Shown here: piece by piece, positions 241 through 46,315 of the stretch
Layout of the letters: every line of letters begins with the position of its first letter
Numbering within the stretch: the stretch's first letter is position 1
Virus record (IMG/VR): IMGVR_UViG_3300027668_000008
Span: 186,001-250,000 of that record
Reading direction: 5' to 3' (one strand)
Length of the DNA: 64,000 nucleotides
Program-made: the position numbers and the translations under genes
Notes under the pieces: generated by a model
What the model was told of the DNA's origin: nothing
Databases searched by the model: none
The model's input: the letters and a program-made list of their open reading frames with translations, nothing else

Positions 241-464
241 TACAACTAACTGTTTGGAAGGACTTGCTGTGAACTCACCTCCAACTTTCTAATAGCAGAT
301 CACATCTAATATTGCAAGGTTTCGACGTGAAATTTACTAGAACCACCGCTTCTTAAACCAACCCACTTGGGCGCCTAAAAAGATTAAGTGTGCGTTACCC
401 CTCTGCCGAAGAGTTATTCCGCCACAAACACAAAAGAATTATAAGCCCTTTTGTTTTAGTTGTT
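241..464 (-). ncRNA. Candidate structured non-coding RNA (~225 nt)
   Basis: No ORF. It has its own promoter, complementary ends (ACAACTAA/TTAGTTGT) and several internal stems. Confidence 0.6.
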
Positions 465-470
465 AAGTAT

Positions 471-499
471 AATATACATTAGAATGTATCCGAAGTCAA
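471..499 (-). promoter_or_regulatory. Sigma70-type promoter driving the candidate ncRNA
   Basis: TTGACT-N17-TATATT; the predicted start (~464) coincides with the terminal stem. Confidence 0.75.
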
Positions 500-517: not shown

Positions 518-889
518 TTATAAATCGCCGTTTTTTCGCATATTTGCACGGATTTTAGTAGCACTAATGTCGTGTATCTCTTTACCTAAGTCATGTTCTG
601 TAATAGTATATCCTACTCCACGCCCATAACTAATGTCTACAATATTTGGAACATTGATAATATTGTACTCTTTACGATACTCGAATCCTTCGAAACTTAA
701 TCCATTAATGATGTTTTTACGGACTGTATCAATATCAAATGGATTATCGTCTACACCCTGTACATTACGAATCATAATGCAAACTTGCCCGGTTTGTGCT
801 AGTGCTTTTTTAAATAATGCTGTGTGGCCATCATGCCACGGTTGCCAGCGACCCAACATCTGAACTGTTGGCTTCTTACTATCAAACAT
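518..889 (-). CDS. HxGH nucleotidyltransferase (cytidylyltransferase / NMNAT-like)
   Basis: GRWQPWHDGH and C-terminal ISATKIR motifs. Confidence 0.8.
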   Translation of the reverse strand: MFDSKKPTVQMLGRWQPWHDGHTALFKKALAQTGQVCIMIRNVQGVDDNPFDIDTVRKNIINGLSFEGFEYRKEYNIINVPNIVDISYGRGVGYTITEHDLGKEIHDISATKIRANMRKNGDL

Positions 890-1307
890 TGTTTCTGTTC
901 ATATAGTTTAGTATTACTTCAGATAATTGTGCGTGTGTATCGTCAAACCATTCACGTACATGGTAATTAACCTTGTTAGGCATTTGAAACATTCTGTTAG
1001 TATCCTCGTACTTGCCAATTTTAATTGTATCCATCCAAACTGTATAATCAGCATTAAACTCTTTTCTTGCTGTTTCAGTAGGACAAATAAAATCACAAAC
1101 TGCGATTTTATCAGACATAACTACTCCATCTGCTAAATGTTTCATGCGTTGTGCTTGTCTTATTCTTCCCTCAGGACTAAAATCCCAATCGTCATATTTT
1201 TTGCGTACTACATCGGCATTGATGTGTACTGCACCAATTAAGTTAGCAAATGGTTTTGCTAGTGTTGTTTTACCACTTCCAGGTAACCCAAAGATTAAAA
1301 TTTTCAT
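882..1307 (-). CDS. cysC: Adenylylsulfate (APS) kinase-like P-loop kinase
   Basis: GLPGSGKTT Walker A plus NADVVR, DFSPEGR and FICP motifs resembling CysC; shorter than cellular CysC. Confidence 0.65.
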   Translation of the reverse strand: MKILIFGLPGSGKTTLAKPFANLIGAVHINADVVRKKYDDWDFSPEGRIRQAQRMKHLADGVVMSDKIAVCDFICPTETARKEFNADYTVWMDTIKIGKYEDTNRMFQMPNKVNYHVREWFDDTHAQLSEVILNYMNRNNV

Positions 1308-1318
1308 ATTGCACTCCT

Positions 1319-1999
1319 CTAAACCAAACTATCAAGTTTAGGTAAAAAATGTTGTTGTTGCTCTGTGCTTAAATATTCTTTTACAAAGTTTCTAACTAAT
1401 GTTATGTTATCGTGTGTGTATTGTTCTACTACATCTTTAGTTAAGTTATATCTTTTCATTACTTCTTCATCATATTTAAAGAATAAACTTTCATAATCAA
1501 TGATGTATGTTTTGTTTGTTGCAAAACTATTAACTTCGTTAACTCGCTGTTTGTAGTCTGATTCCAATAATTTTAAGTCGTTGTCTTCTAATGCGTTGTT
1601 TACAAACTTATTATATGTATTTGTTGTTCGGTTTTTAAGTAAAGTTAAAAAACTAATGTACCACTGTATTTCGGGCTTTGGCAAAATGTAATGTATCTCA
1701 TTTATATCCAAATATTCTTTTAGATATATTGGCACCCAATGCCACGATAAGTTTTCCTCTTTGCTTTCAACTAACTTGCGTATATTATCTTCGTAAATGT
1801 CTTGTCTTATAGTATGCCCAATTTTTAGATAATGATATGCATGAATTTTGTTAAAGAACATTGGTATCCATTTGACCGGACCTTCGACTTGAAATTCGTT
1901 GTTAGGTTTTTCTGTACCGCTTCCGTAATGGTTAACCATTACAAAATTCCCACTTGCTCCGGGTGGCCATATCCATAGTTCGTTAACTTGTTTTTTCAT
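1319..1999 (-). CDS. Hypothetical protein, possibly sulfotransferase-like fold
   Basis: N-terminal WPPGASGNF loop and late IDYESL motif resemble P-loop sulfotransferases. Confidence 0.4.
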   Translation of the reverse strand: MKKQVNELWIWPPGASGNFVMVNHYGSGTEKPNNEFQVEGPVKWIPMFFNKIHAYHYLKIGHTIRQDIYEDNIRKLVESKEENLSWHWVPIYLKEYLDINEIHYILPKPEIQWYISFLTLLKNRTTNTYNKFVNNALEDNDLKLLESDYKQRVNEVNSFATNKTYIIDYESLFFKYDEEVMKRYNLTKDVVEQYTHDNITLVRNFVKEYLSTEQQQHFLPKLDSLV

Positions 2000-2631
2000 A
2001 TTGCACCTTTGTAACTACTTGCTAATTTTATTGTTTCGTCTAATTCCGATTCTGCTTGTGATACATATTTTTCATTTGCATCTTTGTTTAGTGTCTCTAA
2101 AAGTTTACTATCATCTGTTGTTAAGTCAATTACACCTAATTCTGATTCTAACCAATTTAAATAAGGCATCTTATACAAGTATAGCAATTCTTGACTTGCA
2201 AAAATTGTACGATAGTTAGAAATTATGTTATCTAACTCTTGTATAAACACAGGTGTAGTGTGTTTACCTCTTACTCGTTCTTGTTGCAGTTTTACAATAT
2301 TACTATCTCTGCCAATAATAAGAAACTGCACATTTGCAAATTGTGTAACTTGCTTAATAAATTCATCGTATGCTGGTATTGTTTCTATGCCGTCATCAAA
2401 ATAAGGACAACTAATGCTTGTAATAAAATGCTTACTTTGTGTCCAATCAAACTCATACAATTTTGTGGGATCTTTCCAATACTCTGCAAACGGTTCTAAA
2501 TCATGCCCTTCCCAATACTTTTCCTGTAAACTAGGCCAAACAAATATATCGTTATTGTGTCCTAATGCTTTACTGAATAAATGATTACCACTACCTTGTG
2601 GTCCTGTCATTATTGTTAATACTGGTTTCAA
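1996..2631 (-). CDS. Sulfotransferase-like P-loop protein
   Basis: IMTGPQGSGNHL, IIGRD and SQELL align with the 5'PSB, 3'PB and YE-L motifs of sulfotransferases. Confidence 0.5.
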   Translation of the reverse strand: MKPVLTIMTGPQGSGNHLFSKALGHNNDIFVWPSLQEKYWEGHDLEPFAEYWKDPTKLYEFDWTQSKHFITSISCPYFDDGIETIPAYDEFIKQVTQFANVQFLIIGRDSNIVKLQQERVRGKHTTPVFIQELDNIISNYRTIFASQELLYLYKMPYLNWLESELGVIDLTTDDSKLLETLNKDANEKYVSQAESELDETIKLASSYKGAI

Positions 2632-2632
2632 T

Positions 2633-3373
2633 TTAGTCTAGTGTCCATACTGTATCTCGTGATCCGTTTTCAATTAATTCTCGTGTTTTATCAGATTTTA
2701 ATCCTGTAATTTGAATAACTGATCTCGGATAACTGCTTGTATTAGCCGTTGCGTGTGGTACATTGGGCCAATCAAAAATATGTGCTTCGCCGGCTTTCCA
2801 ACGTTCGTATACACAATTACCATACATATAAAATTGACCAGGCTTCCAATCATCTAGGAAAAATGTAATACGACATACTTGCTCTGGGTCATCTAAACAA
2901 CGATCCCATAACTTATCAATATGCAAGTTAAACATTTGTCCAGTTCGTTGAACGTGTGAACGTGCTTTAAATTCGTCTACTCCACCAATAATGCCAAAGT
3001 GTTCTTTCATTTTGATAAGGGTTGGGTAGTCGTCTAACTCGTCGGTCATGTCAGTTAACATTAAGTTTTTAGGATCACCGCCGCCTTTTGCAATATCATG
3101 TTCTTCTTGTTTTAACATTGGAGATTCTACTTCACTCTCTCCATAAAATTTTCGTGTTTGCCAGTTAATAGACTTATTAGAATTTTCAATTAATCTGTTT
3201 TTATCGTCTGACCAATCACCTTCAAAACGACCTAGAACTTTGAACCATTCGCCTTCCTTATCAATAATATTATCATCAAAGTGATACTCGCTGTGTGCTA
3301 CTGTCCAATCCCAACTACTTTCGTATTTGTCTGCAGGTTGTAAAGTTTTATTCCATTTTGTTTTATTATACAT
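2633..3373 (-). CDS. 2OG-Fe(II) dioxygenase / AspH-like cupin hydroxylase
   Basis: HID...PHATAN...R facial triad and WKAGEAHIFD strand. Confidence 0.7.
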   Translation of the reverse strand: MYNKTKWNKTLQPADKYESSWDWTVAHSEYHFDDNIIDKEGEWFKVLGRFEGDWSDDKNRLIENSNKSINWQTRKFYGESEVESPMLKQEEHDIAKGGGDPKNLMLTDMTDELDDYPTLIKMKEHFGIIGGVDEFKARSHVQRTGQMFNLHIDKLWDRCLDDPEQVCRITFFLDDWKPGQFYMYGNCVYERWKAGEAHIFDWPNVPHATANTSSYPRSVIQITGLKSDKTRELIENGSRDTVWTLD

Positions 3374-4874
3374 AATCTATTCCTTTATCTTTTCTTAATA
3401 CGCTGTTTAAAAATATGCCAACAGCGATTATAATACAAACTAAAAATATAGGGTGATTGTAAATATTAAACAATTCTCCCCATCTAAATCCTTCCATAGA
3501 AGTTAGTCCTGGTTTCCACTGTTTGTATCCGTATAACTGTAGTGTTCCCCAAAAGTATTCATCAATCTTAAATGCTACAACATATGCAACAAGGATTGCT
3601 GGTCTACTAATGTTAAATTTCTTACATACTACACCAATTGCACTTAAAATAGTTAACAAGGCTAAATCTTCCCAACCACCTGTATACTGCATATTTGCGT
3701 AAACAATTACTGCTAAAATAAATGTTGCATAAATCCAAAAAGGAACTTCTAATATTTTAAGAATATACTTGTACAGAAAAATACTTAATAGTGCTACACC
3801 AATTGTTCCAAAGATATAACCAAATGCTAAACTGTTTGTAAATTGTAAATCATCTAGTAAACTTGGTGTACCAATTTCCATACCAAAGTACATACAAATT
3901 GCCATAACCATAGCCGCAAATGGTGCCGCTGGAATTCCAAATAACACTGCTGGTATCATACTAGATACTTTTTGTGCATTGTTGGCTCCTTCACAACCTA
4001 GTAGTCCTACAGGGTTACCTTCTCCAAATGGAACTTCTTGATCTTTACCTTTGTGTGCGGCTTTAGTGGCACCGTATGCTAAAAAGTCTCCTACTGCTCC
4101 GCCTACACCTGGTAATAGTCCAGTAACGAACCCAATTAGTCCTCCACGAACCATGTCTTTCCAATGTCGTCTACAATCGCCGAAGCCTTGCTTTAAACCT
4201 TCAAAATAGTTTCCTTCTATTGGTGGTGCCGCTGATTTTAATCCTCGTCTAAATCCATCTAATAACTCCGGAACTCCGAATAGTCCTGATAATAAAACTA
4301 CCATGCCAATTCCGTTTTGTAGATATTCCCAACCAAATGTTAGTCTAGGATTACTTACAACATCTTCGCCTACCATACCTACTGCTAATCCAAATATGAT
4401 TGCACAGATACTTAAAAATATATTTTTACTTGCCACAAAGCCTACACAGGCTAGGGCCATTGTCATGAATCCCAGAAACTCTGGACGTCCAAATAATACG
4501 ATAATCTTCCCATAATAAGGAAGTAAAAAGAAAGTTAATGCCGCGAATATAACTCCATTAAATGTAGAGTCAGTAATAGCAATTCCCATTGCTCTTGCCG
4601 CCTGGCCTTTCTTTGCCATTGGATAACCATCGATAACACAAGCCGCTGTTGTACTAGCGCCTGGTATACCTGTTAGAATACTTGTATAACTATCTGCACT
4701 GGCACAACTTGCCACGATTGCAGTCAGAAAGACCAACCCCAAATAGGGGTCAGCCATAAAGTACGCTCCCATGCTAAAGACAGTTATCAGGGCGGTAGTT
4801 ACACCTGCAATAGGTATAATACCAACTAGCATTCCATACATGGTGCCAATTAATGCCCAGATAACATAATCCAT
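3366..4874 (-). CDS. tctA: Tripartite tricarboxylate transporter, large membrane subunit
   Basis: 502-aa polytopic protein with GIIPIAG, ILTGIPG...DGYPMAKKG, GLLPGVGG and EGANNA...GIP motifs. Confidence 0.92.
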   Translation of the reverse strand: MDYVIWALIGTMYGMLVGIIPIAGVTTALITVFSMGAYFMADPYLGLVFLTAIVASCASADSYTSILTGIPGASTTAACVIDGYPMAKKGQAARAMGIAITDSTFNGVIFAALTFFLLPYYGKIIVLFGRPEFLGFMTMALACVGFVASKNIFLSICAIIFGLAVGMVGEDVVSNPRLTFGWEYLQNGIGMVVLLSGLFGVPELLDGFRRGLKSAAPPIEGNYFEGLKQGFGDCRRHWKDMVRGGLIGFVTGLLPGVGGAVGDFLAYGATKAAHKGKDQEVPFGEGNPVGLLGCEGANNAQKVSSMIPAVLFGIPAAPFAAMVMAICMYFGMEIGTPSLLDDLQFTNSLAFGYIFGTIGVALLSIFLYKYILKILEVPFWIYATFILAVIVYANMQYTGGWEDLALLTILSAIGVVCKKFNISRPAILVAYVVAFKIDEYFWGTLQLYGYKQWKPGLTSMEGFRWGELFNIYNHPIFLVCIIIAVGIFLNSVLRKDKGIDYV

Positions 4875-4884
4875 ACTATATTCC

Positions 4885-5940
4885 TTACTTTAAAAGTTCT
4901 GGTTTATAGATTGATGGAAAGCCGTATGCTTCTTGATTCCACTTAACCGCATCTTTAAGAGCTTTTTCTGTAATCAAAGATTTCAGTGCCGCTAGTAATG
5001 ATGGACCGTCTTGGATCCAAGGATAAACACCAGTCTTAGCATAAATTTCTGCACTTGCAACTGGATCATTAATCATCTCAGTTACAGCCGCTTTAACTTT
5101 TGCCGCATTAGGGTTACCTTTGTTCATCCAAAGTGATTTTTGAATTGCATCACGCCAATTACGAGTAAGTTTATATGCTTGATATAATTCACCTGCTGGA
5201 CGTTCGCCCCATAAGTTCTCATACACATCTTCGAATTGTGTGTTTGGAAAGTTTGGATCTGCAATTTGTACATTGTTTTCTAAGTCTAGAATACCGTGTG
5301 TGAACCAAAGTTCGTTACCTTCGATACCTGTGTAAAAACGTTTCCATGCCGCCGGACTTTCACGTGCAATATCAAATTCGCCGTTTTTAAATCCAAGACG
5401 CTTTTCTCCGCCTGATACACCGTTAACCCAGATAACACGTTCTCTCCAACAAGCCAAGTATGCTTCGATTGAACCTTCTGGTTGTGGACCACATAGCAAC
5501 ATTGCCGCCGCCGCCGCATCTGGTTCAAAACCTGATCCGCCTGCGATTGTCCAAGTGCCGGATTTTTCATCCTTGCCTGCTTGTTTACCTAAAACGATAT
5601 CATTGTTCATTGAACCAATTAGTTCATAATCAAAGTAATCGTAATCTACTTTATCTAGTAGATATGATACACCGTTACCACCATGTGCTACCATAATCGT
5701 TTTGTCATCAAAACGTAGGTCATTGTGGAATTTGTTAAAGCCAGGAATATCACGTGCCCCTGGAATATGGCGTACCACTACTGGTTCACCGATAAACTTT
5801 TCCAAGTTTTTCGCAATAATCTCGCCCCATACAGAAGTACCTTTACCAGGTGCTTGTGGAACAATTAGTGTATAATCAGCGAATGCTGATGTGGCAATAC
5901 TCATCGAAAGTACTGCTGATATTAGTAGTTTTTTAAACAT
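4885..5940 (-). CDS. tctC: Tripartite tricarboxylate transporter substrate-binding protein (TctC/Bug-like)
   Basis: Signal peptide ending AFA, IVPQAPGKGT and VVVRHIPGA motifs; adjacent to tctA. Confidence 0.8.
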   Translation of the reverse strand: MFKKLLISAVLSMSIATSAFADYTLIVPQAPGKGTSVWGEIIAKNLEKFIGEPVVVRHIPGARDIPGFNKFHNDLRFDDKTIMVAHGGNGVSYLLDKVDYDYFDYELIGSMNNDIVLGKQAGKDEKSGTWTIAGGSGFEPDAAAAAMLLCGPQPEGSIEAYLACWRERVIWVNGVSGGEKRLGFKNGEFDIARESPAAWKRFYTGIEGNELWFTHGILDLENNVQIADPNFPNTQFEDVYENLWGERPAGELYQAYKLTRNWRDAIQKSLWMNKGNPNAAKVKAAVTEMINDPVASAEIYAKTGVYPWIQDGPSLLAALKSLITEKALKDAVKWNQEAYGFPSIYKPELLK

Positions 5941-6200
5941 TTATGTTCTCCTTAATTACTACATTAATAATTAACCGTACACTACTGCAAGGTTAGGTCA
6001 AATTTCCATACAAAAAAGCCAAATGCAAAGCATTCAGTTAAAAGTAATTTAGATCAGTTTTTGGGGATTTTTTTTGTTTAAAAAATCGATCAGAATTGAG
6101 TCTATCATTTTCTTTTCTCTTGTTTATAGGTCTTTTCAAAGATTATAGTAAATATTGCATCTACCATCTTTGGAACAGTAAGGTTTACTGTTAACAATAT
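5941..6200 (-). promoter_or_regulatory. Long structured 5' leader of the tctC operon
   Basis: 260 nt between promoter and ATG, with multiple inverted repeats; one stem closes next to the AAGGAG RBS. Confidence 0.45.
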
Positions 6201-6208
6201 TATTTAGC
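6201..6208 (-). promoter_or_regulatory. T4-like late promoter (GCTAAATA)
   Basis: NNTAAATA motif recurring upstream of late genes throughout the window. Confidence 0.65.
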
Positions 6209-6244
6209 AAGAACGTTACCGCCCTTGCTAAAAATTAATTCTTT

Positions 6245-45515: not shown

Positions 45516-45968
45516 TTAAGCGTCTTCTGTGAAGTCTGTATCGTCAGTACCTGCCGCAGTATCGTCGTCACCTGCTTCTTCAACTTGAACTTTTCCGTCC
45601 GATGCTGAAACAGTAGTATTCCAACCTATAGATGTGCCGTGCAATGCGTTAGATCCAGTAGCACTTGGTTGTGCTAGTGTCATTTTACGTCCTGCAATTT
45701 TAGATACACCATAAGTTTCACCATCATCGCCTTTTACAGAAATAATCATATCTGTTCCAGTTAATGCCGCTGGTAAAATACCAGTTTTTAGTGTACGAAT
45801 GTATGCAGTGCCAGGTGTTCCAGTTGCTTTAACTGAAAACTTTTTACTACCTAGTTGCTTTGCGATATATCCTTCAACAACGGCTGAACCGTCATGAAAG
45901 TTTACTTTAATTTCTTTGCCGCCTGCTGTAGGCACTCCGAAAAATCTTTTGTTAATTGGTCTTCCCAT
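45516..45968 (-). CDS. Hypothetical protein, likely an abundant virion or head decoration protein
   Basis: Monocistronic unit with late promoter (46042-46049), AGGAG RBS and terminator; MGRPINKRFFG start. Confidence 0.6.
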   Translation of the reverse strand: MGRPINKRFFGVPTAGGKEIKVNFHDGSAVVEGYIAKQLGSKKFSVKATGTPGTAYIRTLKTGILPAALTGTDMIISVKGDDGETYGVSKIAGRKMTLAQPSATGSNALHGTSIGWNTTVSASDGKVQVEEAGDDDTAAGTDDTDFTEDA

Positions 45969-46244: not shown

Positions 46245-46269
46245 AATCACCCTCCTTATTAAAGTTAGG

Positions 46270-46315
46270 TGCGTTCCTTCGCTATTGCTACTTCCGGCCT
46301 CAAAGGCTGAACGTT
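46270..46315 (-). ncRNA. glnA-type glutamine riboswitch
   Basis: AACGTTCA-GCCT-TTG-AGGC-CGGAAGTA-GCAATAGC-GAAGGAACGCA matches the glnA motif: P1 CGTTC/GAACG with E-loop GGAAGTA...GAAG. Confidence 0.85.

What the first reader, a model, noticed from the sequence alone, without database searches (positions are those of the whole stretch)
518..5940. Late operon coupling a TTT importer to a possible activation and sulfation pathway
Seen: seven tightly packed co-oriented genes, namely tctC, tctA, a 2OG/AspH-like hydroxylase, two sulfotransferase-like proteins, an APS-kinase-like protein and an HxGH nucleotidyltransferase, all behind a late promoter. Known: ATP sulfurylase is an HxGH enzyme, APS kinase makes PAPS, sulfotransferases consume PAPS, and some TTT systems carry sulfonated acids such as sulfolactate. 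Inference: a phage import-hydroxylate-sulfate module acting late, perhaps modifying virion or cell-surface glycans. An alternative reading of the last two genes is a split NadR-like kinase/NMNAT pair.
Basis: partly seen in the sequence, partly recalled or inferred. Interest (0 to 1): 0.8.

Follow-up and report, generated by a model that had tools for sequence, protein, structure and literature searches.

The report
Phage transporter cassette with tailoring enzymes
An uncultured marine jumbo phage carries its own two-part carboxylate uptake system, tightly linked to an oxygenase and a sulfotransferase-like enzyme, and this four-gene cassette recurs in many marine phages, whereas the proposed seven-gene sulfation pathway behind a late promoter is only partly supported.

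Summary
The seven co-oriented, tightly packed minus-strand genes are real. All evolve under purifying selection (dN/dS 0.05-0.18).
- TctA is certain (Pfam 1e-86).
- The signal-peptide protein is a very divergent TctC-like binding protein.
- g3 is a 2OG/Fe(II) oxygenase by fold, with an intact HxD...H...R set.
- g4 has a sulfotransferase-like fold but an atypical phosphate loop.
- g6 is APS-kinase-like.
- g7 is an HxGH nucleotidyltransferase whose only solved relatives are NMN adenylyltransferases, not ATP sulfurylase.

The region is composite, not one pathway. The core is SBP-TctA-g3-g4, conserved across diverged marine phage contigs and usually joined by a methyltransferase-like gene and another sulfotransferase-like gene that this phage lacks. 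g5 is rare. g6-g7 is an independent pair, fused in some cultured phages. It normally sits among replication and recombination genes, as it does here, and almost never with the cassette.

The phage's own candidate late-promoter motif (ATAAATA) is absent upstream of g1. Two terminator-like hairpins separate g1 from the structural genes.

The best reading is a phage-supplied uptake system for an unknown carboxylate that is then hydroxylated and perhaps sulfated. The substrate and the chemistry are inferred, not shown.

The parts
5941..6244 (-). Upstream intergenic region of 304 nt. It holds two terminator-like hairpins (6232-6203 and 6037-6019, the second followed by a T-run), a 19-codon ORF and a strong AGGAG ribosome-binding site before g1. 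It holds no candidate late-promoter motif.
   Evidence: Sequence; hairpins; no TATAAATA or ATAAATA; upstream regions of relatives are not conserved
4885..5940 (-). g1: periplasmic solute-binding protein, 351 aa, with a cleavable signal peptide (..SAFA/DYT). It is a highly divergent TctC/Bug-like protein.
   Evidence: No Pfam hit. Weak BugE 2dvz and TctC 6hke hits at the 'IVPxAPGxGT' motif. hhalign against Salmonella TctC: E 3e-4 over 90 columns. Atlas: a neighbour's model has TM 0.79 to bacterial TctC clusters. 880 homologues, and the listed best 120 (down to 52% identity) carry no Pfam domain. dN/dS about 0.09-0.11. RNA-library contigs cover it at 99-100% identity in 4 of 4 marine metatranscriptomes.
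3366..4874 (-). g2: TctA large membrane subunit of a tripartite tricarboxylate transporter, 502 aa and multi-spanning. No tctB gene accompanies it.
   Evidence: PF01970, 1.1e-86, residues 5-428. Hydropathy. No further ORF in the module. The Salmonella operon has tctB between tctC and tctA. dN/dS 0.05-0.08.
2633..3373 (-). g3: Fe(II)/2-oxoglutarate oxygenase, 246 aa, with a double-stranded beta-helix fold, like proline hydroxylases and AspH. Its start overlaps the tctA stop by 8 nt.
   Evidence: H151-x-D153 is invariant; H207 and R217 are nearly invariant. AF2 pLDDT 91.7. Foldseek hits: proline cis-4-hydroxylase 4p7x at 1.9e-6, proline 3-hydroxylase 1e5r, AspH 6yyy. Atlas PF05118 neighbours. 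No Pfam hit for the protein itself.
1996..2631 (-). g4: sulfotransferase-fold protein, 211 aa. Its glycine-rich loop GPQGSGNH is atypical, with no Lys/Arg at the catalytic position. It keeps an RD...Q motif at the position of the 3'-phosphate-binding motif.
   Evidence: AF2 pLDDT 93. Foldseek PDB top hits are TPST1/2 and SULTs, E 1.5e-4, TM 0.47-0.50. BFVD top hits are viral sulfotransferase family proteins. Invariant residues. More than 1275 homologues, and the listed best 120 carry no Pfam domain. No hit in deposited phage genomes.
1319..1999 (-). g5: rare accessory protein, 226 aa, with an N-terminal PPGASGNF loop. It may be a second sulfotransferase-like protein. This is unverified.
   Evidence: Only 11 representative clusters in 1.84 billion proteins. 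Present in 2 of 25 loci. Atlas neighbours resemble Sulfotransfer_3 models at TM 0.6-0.7. No significant profile similarity to g4, to ST206 or to PDB. dN/dS 0.08.
882..1307 (-). g6: short P-loop kinase of the APS-kinase family, 141 aa. It matches only the first ~90 positions of the 152-position APS_kinase profile.
   Evidence: PF01583, 33.1 bits against a cut-off of 21.1. The PDB profile's best single-stretch matches are APS kinases (2yvu 1e-11, 3cr7, 1d6j, PAPSS1). It matches the N-half of phrog_10255. Motifs.
518..889 (-). g7: minimal HxGH nucleotidyltransferase, 123 aa, NMNAT-like. Motifs are GRWQPWHDGH, YGRGVGY and ISATKIR. Its start overlaps the g6 stop by 8 nt. It is fused to g6 in Xylella, Stenotrophomonas and other phages.
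   Evidence: PF01467, 1.3e-3. NCBIfam NadM/NMNAT, 5e-6, below cut-offs. PDB profile hits: archaeal NMNAT 1f9a at 1.4e-7 and NadM, with no ATP sulfurylase at E<=10. Fusion proteins.
438..499 (-). Downstream boundary: two strong sigma-70-like promoters directly after the g7 stop. They start the next transcription units (a conserved non-coding element, then gp32-like and UvsX-like genes).

Best explanation
The region is a composite of three units.

(A) g1-g4 form a four-gene accessory cassette that moves among uncultured marine phages. It has a signal-peptide-bearing TctC-like binding protein, a TctA permease (no TctB), an Fe(II)/2OG oxygenase and a sulfotransferase-fold protein.
- Shown: the genes, their folds and motifs, their conserved order, their translational coupling, purifying selection, and presence in marine RNA libraries.
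- Inferred: during infection the phage installs its own high-affinity uptake system for an organic acid in a Gram-negative host. The binding protein works in the periplasm and TctA in the inner membrane. The imported compound is then tailored in the cytoplasm. g3 hydroxylates it. g4 transfers a group to it, most likely sulfate from PAPS.
- In most other phages a methyltransferase-like protein and a second sulfotransferase-like protein belong to the same neighbourhood.

(B) g5 is a rare add-on of unverified fold.

(C) g6-g7 is a separate, widespread phage gene pair: an APS-kinase-like kinase plus an NMNAT-like nucleotidyltransferase. Its usual home is the replication and recombination region. 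It lies next to the cassette here because the cassette was inserted beside it. It could raise the PAPS supply for g4, but it is not an obligatory partner.

The substrate is unknown.
For: - ORFs and spacing.
- TctA is certain.
- The SBP is TctC-like by adjacency, signal peptide and remote matches.
- g3 fold and HxD...H...R.
- g4 fold.
- Co-occurrence in 25 loci with at least 4 kb on both sides of TctA: SBP 25, g3 adjacent 23, g4 25, MT-like 21, ST206 11, g6 13, g7 11, g5 2.
- The cassette, or most of it, is kept where the parts are only 37-61% identical and in other phage backgrounds, next to RNR and heme oxygenase or next to PhoH and RNA ligase. L061 carries ST206 in place of g4.
- The SBP family is essentially phage-only. 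Only 2 hits were found in 185,579 species-representative genomes. One lies on an 11-kb MAG contig with phage-like genes, the other on a 1.9-kb MAG contig.
- g6-g7 are fused and stand alone in cultured phages among DNA-metabolism genes.
- In 79 further viral loci g6 keeps g7 (66) but not g4 (1) or the SBP (1). The neighbours are UvsW, UvsX, UvsY, primase and sigma factor.
- Here gp32-like and UvsX-like genes follow g7.
- dN/dS is 0.05-0.18 for all seven genes.
- RNA-library contigs cover the SBP gene in 4 of 4 metatranscriptomes.
Against: - No substrate, transport activity or enzyme activity has been measured.
- g4 lacks the catalytic Lys/Arg of the sulfotransferase 5'-phosphosulfate loop. It matches no sulfotransferase Pfam model. 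Its TM-scores are only about 0.5, and P-loop kinases appear among the hits.
- The SBP fails the TctC Pfam model.
- No TctB is present, and canonical systems need one.
- Gene adjacency in phage variable islands can reflect insertion hot spots rather than a shared pathway.
- The related loci are phylogenetically non-independent.
- RNA-library contigs do not prove transcription.
Confidence: 0.45

Rival explanations
1. All seven genes act together: TTT imports an acid, g3 hydroxylates it, g7 (as an ATP sulfurylase) and g6 (as an APS kinase) make PAPS, and g4 and g5 sulfate the product late in infection, possibly for virion or surface glycans.
For: - g6 passes the Pfam APS_kinase cut-off, and APS kinases are its best single-stretch solved matches.
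- g6 directly abuts g4 in several relatives (L008, L015, L017, L029).
- The kinase-N, transferase-C order of the fusion proteins matches the order I recall for animal PAPS synthase (the PAPSS order is my own knowledge).
- A g6-type kinase in phiRSL1 lies in one cluster with a bona fide Sulfotransfer_2 protein.
- g7 carries an invariant YGR[G/D]VGY, which recalls the GRD loop of ATP sulfurylase (the GRD loop is my own knowledge).
Against: - g7 has no detectable similarity to ATP sulfurylase. It resembles NMNATs and is only 123 aa.
- g6-g7 nearly always occur without the cassette or any sulfotransferase among their 20 commonest neighbour families.
- Only 13 of 25 cassette loci have g6.
- No late-promoter motif was found.
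- The module has no glycosyltransferase.
Confidence: 0.15
2. g6-g7 is a nucleotide-cofactor salvage pair unrelated to the cassette. In the NadR-like logic, a kinase makes NMN from nicotinamide riboside and g7 adenylylates it to NAD+. This would support replication or counter NAD-depleting defences.
For: - g7's only solved relatives are archaeal, NadM and NadR-type NMNATs. It has the GRxQPxHxGH and ISxTxIR motifs.
- It hits a PHROG NMNAT family.
- The pair sits among replication, recombination and nucleotide-metabolism genes in cultured and uncultured phages.
Against: - g6's best single-stretch solved matches are APS kinases, and NadR was not among the 60 listed matches. It keeps APS-kinase-type motifs (D32, R35, FS..GR, F[IV]CP).
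- g7 lacks about 45 residues of a full NMNAT. In the stretch after P81 it has YGR[G/D]VGY, where I recall an Asn and a Trp that bind NMN in archaeal NMNATs (the role of those residues is my own knowledge).
- All NCBIfam scores are far below cut-offs.
Confidence: 0.3
3. g3 and g4 modify proteins or peptides rather than an imported small molecule: an AspH-type hydroxylase and a tyrosylprotein-sulfotransferase-type enzyme acting on a phage or host protein. Their position next to the transporter would be island co-location.
For: - The best PDB fold matches of g4 are tyrosylprotein sulfotransferases.
- AspH, a protein hydroxylase, is among the g3 matches.
- Per Atlas cluster labels, AspH + sulfotransferase fusion proteins exist in bacteria.
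Against: - The top g3 matches are free-amino-acid (proline) hydroxylases.
- g3 overlaps the tctA stop codon. The TTT-g3-g4 order is kept at 37-49% identity and in different genomic contexts.
- No candidate substrate peptide gene is conserved in the cassette.
Confidence: 0.12
4. The cassette is a nutrient-scavenging or catabolic device. It would import an organic acid, for example a sulfonated or otherwise substituted carboxylate or 2-oxoglutarate itself. The oxygenase would cleave or activate it to release a nutrient or feed central metabolism. g4 would play a non-sulfotransferase role.
For: - From my own knowledge, TTT systems carry di- and tricarboxylates and sulfolactate, and 2OG oxygenases of other families release sulfite or sulfate from organosulfur compounds.
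- g4's loop is atypical for a sulfotransferase.
- Viral tctA has been reported as an AMG of unknown role in viruses of sulfur-oxidising SUP05 bacteria (PMC4164917).
Against: - There is no direct evidence.
- g3 is not of the TauD/AtsK family by fold ranking.
- A methyltransferase-like and a sulfotransferase-like partner in most loci point to tailoring rather than breakdown.
Confidence: 0.1

Closest known systems
Tripartite tricarboxylate transporters (TctCBA of Salmonella; Bug proteins of Bordetella)
   Same: It has a TctA permease (PF01970, 1e-86). The adjacent gene encodes a secreted binding protein of about 330 mature residues. That protein has the N-terminal strand-loop motif of TctC/Bug proteins.
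   Different: There is no TctB. The binding protein does not match the TctC Pfam model and belongs to a large, essentially phage-only family. The system is encoded by a virus and coupled to enzymes.
Phage auxiliary metabolic genes for uptake (e.g. cyanophage pstS) and the previously noted viral tctA
   Same: A phage carries host-type nutrient-uptake genes. tctA domain hits on viral contigs have been reported with unknown role (PMC4164917, PMC6359870, PMC8115048).
   Different: Here both parts of a secondary transporter are present (binding protein plus permease). They form a conserved cassette with an oxygenase and a sulfotransferase-fold protein. I found no description of this in the papers searched.
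2OG/Fe(II) oxygenases of the AspH and proline-hydroxylase type
   Same: It has the double-stranded beta-helix fold, the HxD...H triad and a distal Arg.
   Different: It has no Pfam membership. TM-scores are only about 0.45. The substrate is unknown.
PAPS-dependent sulfotransferases (TPST, cytosolic SULTs, Sulfotransfer_3)
   Same: The overall fold matches. It has a strand-loop-helix phosphate loop at the N-terminus. An Arg-Asp lies after the strand at the position of the 3'-phosphate-binding motif.
   Different: The loop is GPQGSGNH, without the catalytic Lys/Arg. Gln stands in place of the motif Ser. No sulfotransferase Pfam model matches.
PAPS synthase (APS kinase fused to ATP sulfurylase) and viral cysC auxiliary genes
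   Same: g6 is of the APS-kinase family. In other phages it is fused, kinase first, to an HxGH nucleotidyltransferase. Viral cysC genes are a known category (PMC10914622; bioRxiv 10.1101/2021.01.05.425418).
   Different: The kinase is truncated. The transferase is NMNAT-like, 123 aa, and shows no ATP-sulfurylase similarity. The pair's usual context is replication genes.
NadR / NadM (NMN adenylyltransferase with a kinase or Nudix partner)
   Same: The g7 motifs and its nearest solved relatives are of this kind.
   Different: The domain order is reversed relative to NadR. The kinase is of APS-kinase type rather than NadR type. g7 is much shorter.

Membership tests
Tripartite tricarboxylate transporter (TTT) | TctA large membrane subunit (PF01970) | tested here: met
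   1.1e-86, 291.6 bits against a cut-off of 28.9, residues 5-428
Tripartite tricarboxylate transporter (TTT) | TctC/Bug periplasmic binding protein (PF03401) | tested here: inconclusive
   No Pfam hit at E<=1. Remote signals only: PDB BugE 0.54 and TctC 2.0; hhalign against Salmonella TctC at E 3e-4, probability 40%; Atlas neighbour TM 0.79. A signal peptide is present.
Tripartite tricarboxylate transporter (TTT) | TctB small membrane subunit | tested here: not met
   No further ORF of 50 aa or more with membrane segments in the module. The Salmonella operon has a 143-aa gene at the tctB position between tctC and tctA (annotated hypothetical, cytoplasmic membrane).
Fe(II)/2-oxoglutarate oxygenase (AspH-like, PF05118) | Double-stranded beta-helix fold | tested here: met
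   AF2 pLDDT 91.7. Foldseek hits to proline hydroxylases and AspH, E 2e-6 to 3e-5.
Fe(II)/2-oxoglutarate oxygenase (AspH-like, PF05118) | HxD/E...H metal triad and a basic residue for the 2OG C5 carboxylate | tested here: met
   H151 and D153 are invariant. H207 and R217 are at least 90% conserved and lie on predicted strands.
Fe(II)/2-oxoglutarate oxygenase (AspH-like, PF05118) | Match to the Pfam family model | tested here: not met
   No hit for the window protein. The best among 15 relatives is E 0.12.
PAPS-dependent sulfotransferase (g4) | Sulfotransferase fold | tested here: inconclusive
   The top PDB and BFVD matches are sulfotransferases, but TM is 0.47-0.51 and kinases are interleaved.
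PAPS-dependent sulfotransferase (g4) | 5'-phosphosulfate-binding loop with catalytic Lys/Arg (PKxGTT type) | tested here: not met
   The invariant loop is GPQGSGNH, with Gly/Gln at the Lys position.
PAPS-dependent sulfotransferase (g4) | 3'-phosphate-binding motif (Arg ... Ser after a strand) | tested here: inconclusive
   R108-D109 are invariant after strand 100-107. Gln116 stands where the Ser is expected. The mapping is by secondary structure, not by superposition.
PAPS-dependent sulfotransferase (g4) | Match to any sulfotransferase Pfam model | tested here: not met
   None in 38 family members at E<=10.
PAPS-dependent sulfotransferase (g5) | Fold or family match | tested here: inconclusive
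   There is only an Atlas lead through a neighbour's model. There is no Pfam, PDB or profile match.
APS kinase (CysC, PF01583) (g6) | Family model above the curated cut-off, with P-loop | tested here: met
   33.1 bits against 21.1. GLPGSGKTT loop. The best single-stretch PDB matches are APS kinases, 1e-11.
APS kinase (CysC, PF01583) (g6) | Full-length domain including the lid, and equivalog-level score | tested here: not met
   The match ends at profile position 93 of 152. NCBIfam scores are 24-30 bits against cut-offs of 127-669.
APS kinase (CysC, PF01583) (g6) | APS to PAPS activity | not testable with these tools
   Needs an enzyme assay.
ATP sulfurylase (PF01747) (g7) | Family model, or a solved relative | tested here: not met
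   12.7 bits against 24.3. No ATP sulfurylase among PDB hits at E<=10. The protein is 123 aa, against a 212-position catalytic-domain profile.
NMN adenylyltransferase, archaeal/NadM/NadR type (g7) | GRxQPxHxGH and ISxTxxR motifs, with nearest relatives of this type | tested here: met
   GRWQPWHDGH and ISATKIR are present. PDB 1f9a 1.4e-7, NadM 1.8e-6.
NMN adenylyltransferase, archaeal/NadM/NadR type (g7) | Curated family score and full-length domain | tested here: not met
   NCBIfam scores are at most 26 bits against cut-offs of 127-449. Only residues 9-89 align. The second half carries YGR[G/D]VGY.

The most novel reading that the evidence does not exclude
The g6-g7 pair, fused in some cultured phages, is a minimal PAPS synthase of a new type. 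In it an NMNAT-derived 120-residue nucleotidyltransferase has become a sulfate adenylyltransferase. Marine phages would use it together with the TTT-oxygenase-sulfotransferase cassette to turn an imported organic acid into a sulfated metabolite during infection.
Probability: 0.12. Interest if true: 0.85.

Novelty: new variant of a known kind. Interest (0 to 1): 0.55.

Why it matters
Phage auxiliary genes for nutrient uptake are known mostly as single binding proteins such as pstS. Here a phage supplies both the binding protein and the permease of a secondary transporter. The pair is locked to two tailoring enzymes in a cassette found on many marine phage contigs: more than 880 SBP homologues and more than 1275 g4 homologues in metagenomes. 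It is also seen in marine RNA libraries.

Four of the seven proteins (SBP, g3, g4, g5) belong to families with no Pfam model. If the cassette imports and chemically alters a dissolved organic acid, it would be a virus-driven route in marine carbon or sulfur cycling. It would also give the long-unexplained viral tctA genes a testable function.

The analysis also separates a widespread phage kinase-nucleotidyltransferase pair whose chemistry (PAPS, NAD or other) is open and easy to assay.

Tried and rejected
- T4-type late promoter: TATAAATA occurs 5 times in the window against 8.7 expected, and none lies upstream of g1. The derived motif ATAAATA marks minus-strand gene starts, mostly of structural genes, but not g1. 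No convincing sigma-70-like site lies in the g1 upstream region 5941-6244 either.
- DNA-level search in deposited phages found no match. TctA tblastn hits there are bacterial or contaminant-like records.
- g4 and g5 as paralogues: hhalign found only a 15-column loop match, E 0.12. ST206 against g4 and g5 was not significant.
- PDB profile searches gave nothing significant for g3, g4, g5 and ST206. Pfam on 38 g4 relatives and 15 g3 relatives gave nothing useful.
- Bacterial origin or host clue: the genome-contig scan gave only two short MAG contigs. One (11 kb) carries phage-like genes; the other is 1.9 kb.
- Defence-system reading: PADLOC gave only generic P-loop hits for g6.
- No tRNAs were found. 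The only Rfam hit in the window is a glutamine riboswitch far from the module.
- The C-terminal half of phiRSL1 ORF238 is not a g7 homologue.
- Metatranscriptome contigs show presence only. They cannot place a 5' end or prove co-transcription.

Full report
**Source and setting.** The window is part of a 306.7-kb viral contig (IMGVR_UViG_3300027668_000008). Its large terminase is about 50% identical to those of PA5oct- and Atu_ph07-type jumbo phages. Most of the window is a minus-strand structural block: portal, major head protein, tail sheath, tail tube, TerL and an 813-aa virion structural protein. The finding lies at the 3' end of that block. Directly downstream come strong sigma-70-like promoters, a conserved non-coding element, and then gp32-like and UvsX-like genes.

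**Observation.** Seven minus-strand ORFs occupy 5940..518. Spacers are 10, 1 and 11 nt, and overlaps are 8, 4 and 8 nt. All have homologues, and pairwise dN/dS is 0.05-0.18, lowest for TctA and the binding protein. Contigs from four marine metatranscriptome libraries cover the binding-protein gene at 99-100% identity and cover other parts patchily. This shows presence in RNA libraries, not proven transcription.

**The 'late promoter' part fails.** TATAAATA is not upstream of g1. A shorter motif, ATAAATA, occurs 13 times on the minus strand. Ten of these lie 25-75 nt upstream of minus-strand gene starts, most of them in the structural-gene block. None lies in the 304-nt g1 upstream region. That region holds two terminator-like hairpins. 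Upstream regions of relatives share only a strong ribosome-binding site.

**Gene identities.**
- g2 is TctA (PF01970, 1e-86).
- g1 has a signal peptide and no Pfam hit. Its profile hits BugE and a TctC structure weakly at the canonical N-terminal motif. It aligns in register with Salmonella TctC (hhalign E 3e-4). It also has TctC-labelled structural neighbours in the Atlas. No tctB is present, unlike the Salmonella operon.
- g3 has no Pfam hit. It has an invariant H151-x-D153 and conserved H207 and R217. A confident model (pLDDT 91.7) best matches proline hydroxylases and AspH.
- g4 has no Pfam hit in 38 relatives. Its confident model (pLDDT 93) ranks tyrosylprotein and cytosolic sulfotransferases first in PDB, and viral 'sulfotransferase family' proteins first in BFVD. 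TM is about 0.5 and kinases are interleaved. Its invariant loop GPQGSGNH lacks the catalytic Lys/Arg. R108-D109...Q116 occupies the place of the 3'-phosphate motif.
- g5 is very rare. Its only support is an Atlas lead.
- g6 passes the APS_kinase Pfam cut-off, and APS kinases are its best single-stretch solved matches, but it is truncated.
- g7 is an HxGH transferase whose solved relatives are exclusively NMNATs. No ATP sulfurylase appears even at E<=10.

**Co-occurrence.** Scans of viral contigs gave 58 related loci. Of 25 distinct loci with at least 4 kb on both sides of TctA:
- all have the binding protein and g4;
- 23 have g3 directly after TctA;
- 21 have a class-I methyltransferase-like gene;
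- 11 have another sulfotransferase-like family ('ST206', weak Sulfotransfer_3 hit, KSH and YR motifs);
- 13 have g6, 11 have g7 and 2 have g5.

The window phage and its nearest relative lack the methyltransferase-like and ST206 genes. The core persists where its parts are only 37-61% identical, and in other phage backgrounds with RNR and heme oxygenase, or PhoH and RNA ligase, nearby. L062 keeps all four genes. L061 carries ST206 in place of g4. Species-representative bacterial genomes hold only two relatives of the binding protein, both on short MAG contigs. One of them (11 kb) carries phage-like genes. Deposited phage genomes hold no g4 and only one weak g3 relative.

**The g6-g7 pair behaves differently.**
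- It is one fused protein in Xylella phages Salvo and Sano, Stenotrophomonas DLP_6 and others. There it lies among MazG, topoisomerase, ligase and SSB genes, with no TTT genes in the stretches examined.
- At least 403 viral contigs encode a g6 relative. In 79 newly fetched loci g7 accompanies it in 66, g4 in 1, g3 in 2 and the binding protein in 1.
- The commonest neighbours are UvsW, UvsX, UvsY, primase, DnaB, a sigma factor, ThyX, peptide deformylase, and KDO-pathway and sugar-nucleotide enzymes. None of the 20 commonest neighbour clusters matched a sulfotransferase Pfam model; 4 had no Pfam hit.

So the pair's native place is the replication and recombination region, which is where it sits in this window. 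The cassette lies beside it.

One counter-observation keeps a PAPS role alive. In phiRSL1 a g6-type kinase, without the g7 domain, lies in a cluster with a bona fide Sulfotransfer_2 protein, glycosyltransferase-like genes and a 5-hmdU DNA kinase.

**Interpretation.**
- Shown: the anatomy, the folds, the conserved order, selection, and the distribution.
- Inferred: the cassette lets the phage install an uptake system for an organic acid in a Gram-negative host and modify that acid by hydroxylation and a sulfotransferase-type transfer.
- Open: whether g6-g7 feed this step with PAPS, make NAD, or do something else. g6 looks like an APS kinase, g7 looks like an NMNAT, and neither reading fits both.

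**Literature.** Viral tctA has been noted with unknown role (PMC4164917, PMC6359870, PMC8115048). Viral cysC genes are a recognised category (PMC10914622; bioRxiv 10.1101/2021.01.05.425418). I found no description of the cassette.

**Verdict.** The unified late sulfation operon is only partly supported. What is there is a new variant of a phage auxiliary metabolic cassette, next to an independent and still unexplained kinase-transferase pair.

Noticed in passing
window ~255-430 (- strand), between promoters at 499-471 / 466-438 and 211-183: A conserved non-coding element of about 175 nt lies just after g7 and before the gp32-like gene. It is 84-87% identical in related phages, while g7 next to it is 63-71% identical at the protein level in the same relatives. 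The predicted fold has z -2.1, with 59 consensus pairs and 2 compensatory changes. There is no Rfam match. It is a candidate phage small RNA or leader.
   Followed up: partly
window 46268-46315 (- strand): A glutamine riboswitch aptamer (RF01739, 52.6 bits against a gathering score of 35) lies between the major head protein gene and a 150-aa ORF (45968..45516). That ORF has no Pfam or PHROG match. A TATAAATA lies at 46049-46042. It may hint at host type or at nitrogen-responsive control inside a late region.
   Followed up: partly
window minus strand, e.g. 55389-55383, 52898-52892, 43867-43861, 39043-39037, 35034-35028, 34079-34073, 12978-12972, 12441-12435: The motif ATAAATA occurs 13 times on the minus strand, 10 of them 25-75 nt upstream of gene starts. 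It is a candidate late-promoter core for this phage.
   Followed up: partly
L065/L066 (Ralstonia phage phiRSL1, NC_010811.2, about 164-171.5 kb): A g6-type APS-kinase-like protein (ORF238) lies in one co-oriented cluster with three glycosyltransferase-like genes, two nucleotidyltransferase/kinase-like genes, a Sulfotransfer_2 protein (ORF232), a 5-hmdU DNA kinase (ORF231) and a thymidylate-synthase-like gene (ORF230). This is possibly a DNA hypermodification pathway that uses sulfate.
   Followed up: partly
L003, L008, L010, L011, L016, L017, L021, L022, L026, L029, L031, L057, L058, L061-L063 (positions): A class-I methyltransferase-like gene lies next to the TTT pair in 21 of 25 informative loci, and a second sulfotransferase-like family (ST206) in 11 of 25. 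Both are absent from the window phage.
   Followed up: partly
window ~6107-6048 (- strand): A 19-codon ORF (MIDSILIDFLNKKNPQKLI) lies between the two hairpins upstream of g1. A similar peptide can be read at the same place in the related locus L015.
   Followed up: no
L001:15904-16656 and L001:16688-17461 (about 3.5-5 kb beyond the window's first base): A class-I methyltransferase lies there, next to a fusion of a cytidylyltransferase-like domain with a mannose-6-phosphate-isomerase-type cupin. They suggest sugar-nucleotide chemistry elsewhere in this phage.
   Followed up: no
L068-L146 (viral contigs with g6 relatives): In 13 loci a small DUF2061 membrane protein gene directly follows the kinase gene. 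KdsA-like, CMP-KDO-synthetase-like, carbamoyltransferase and peptide deformylase genes are recurrent neighbours.
   Followed up: no
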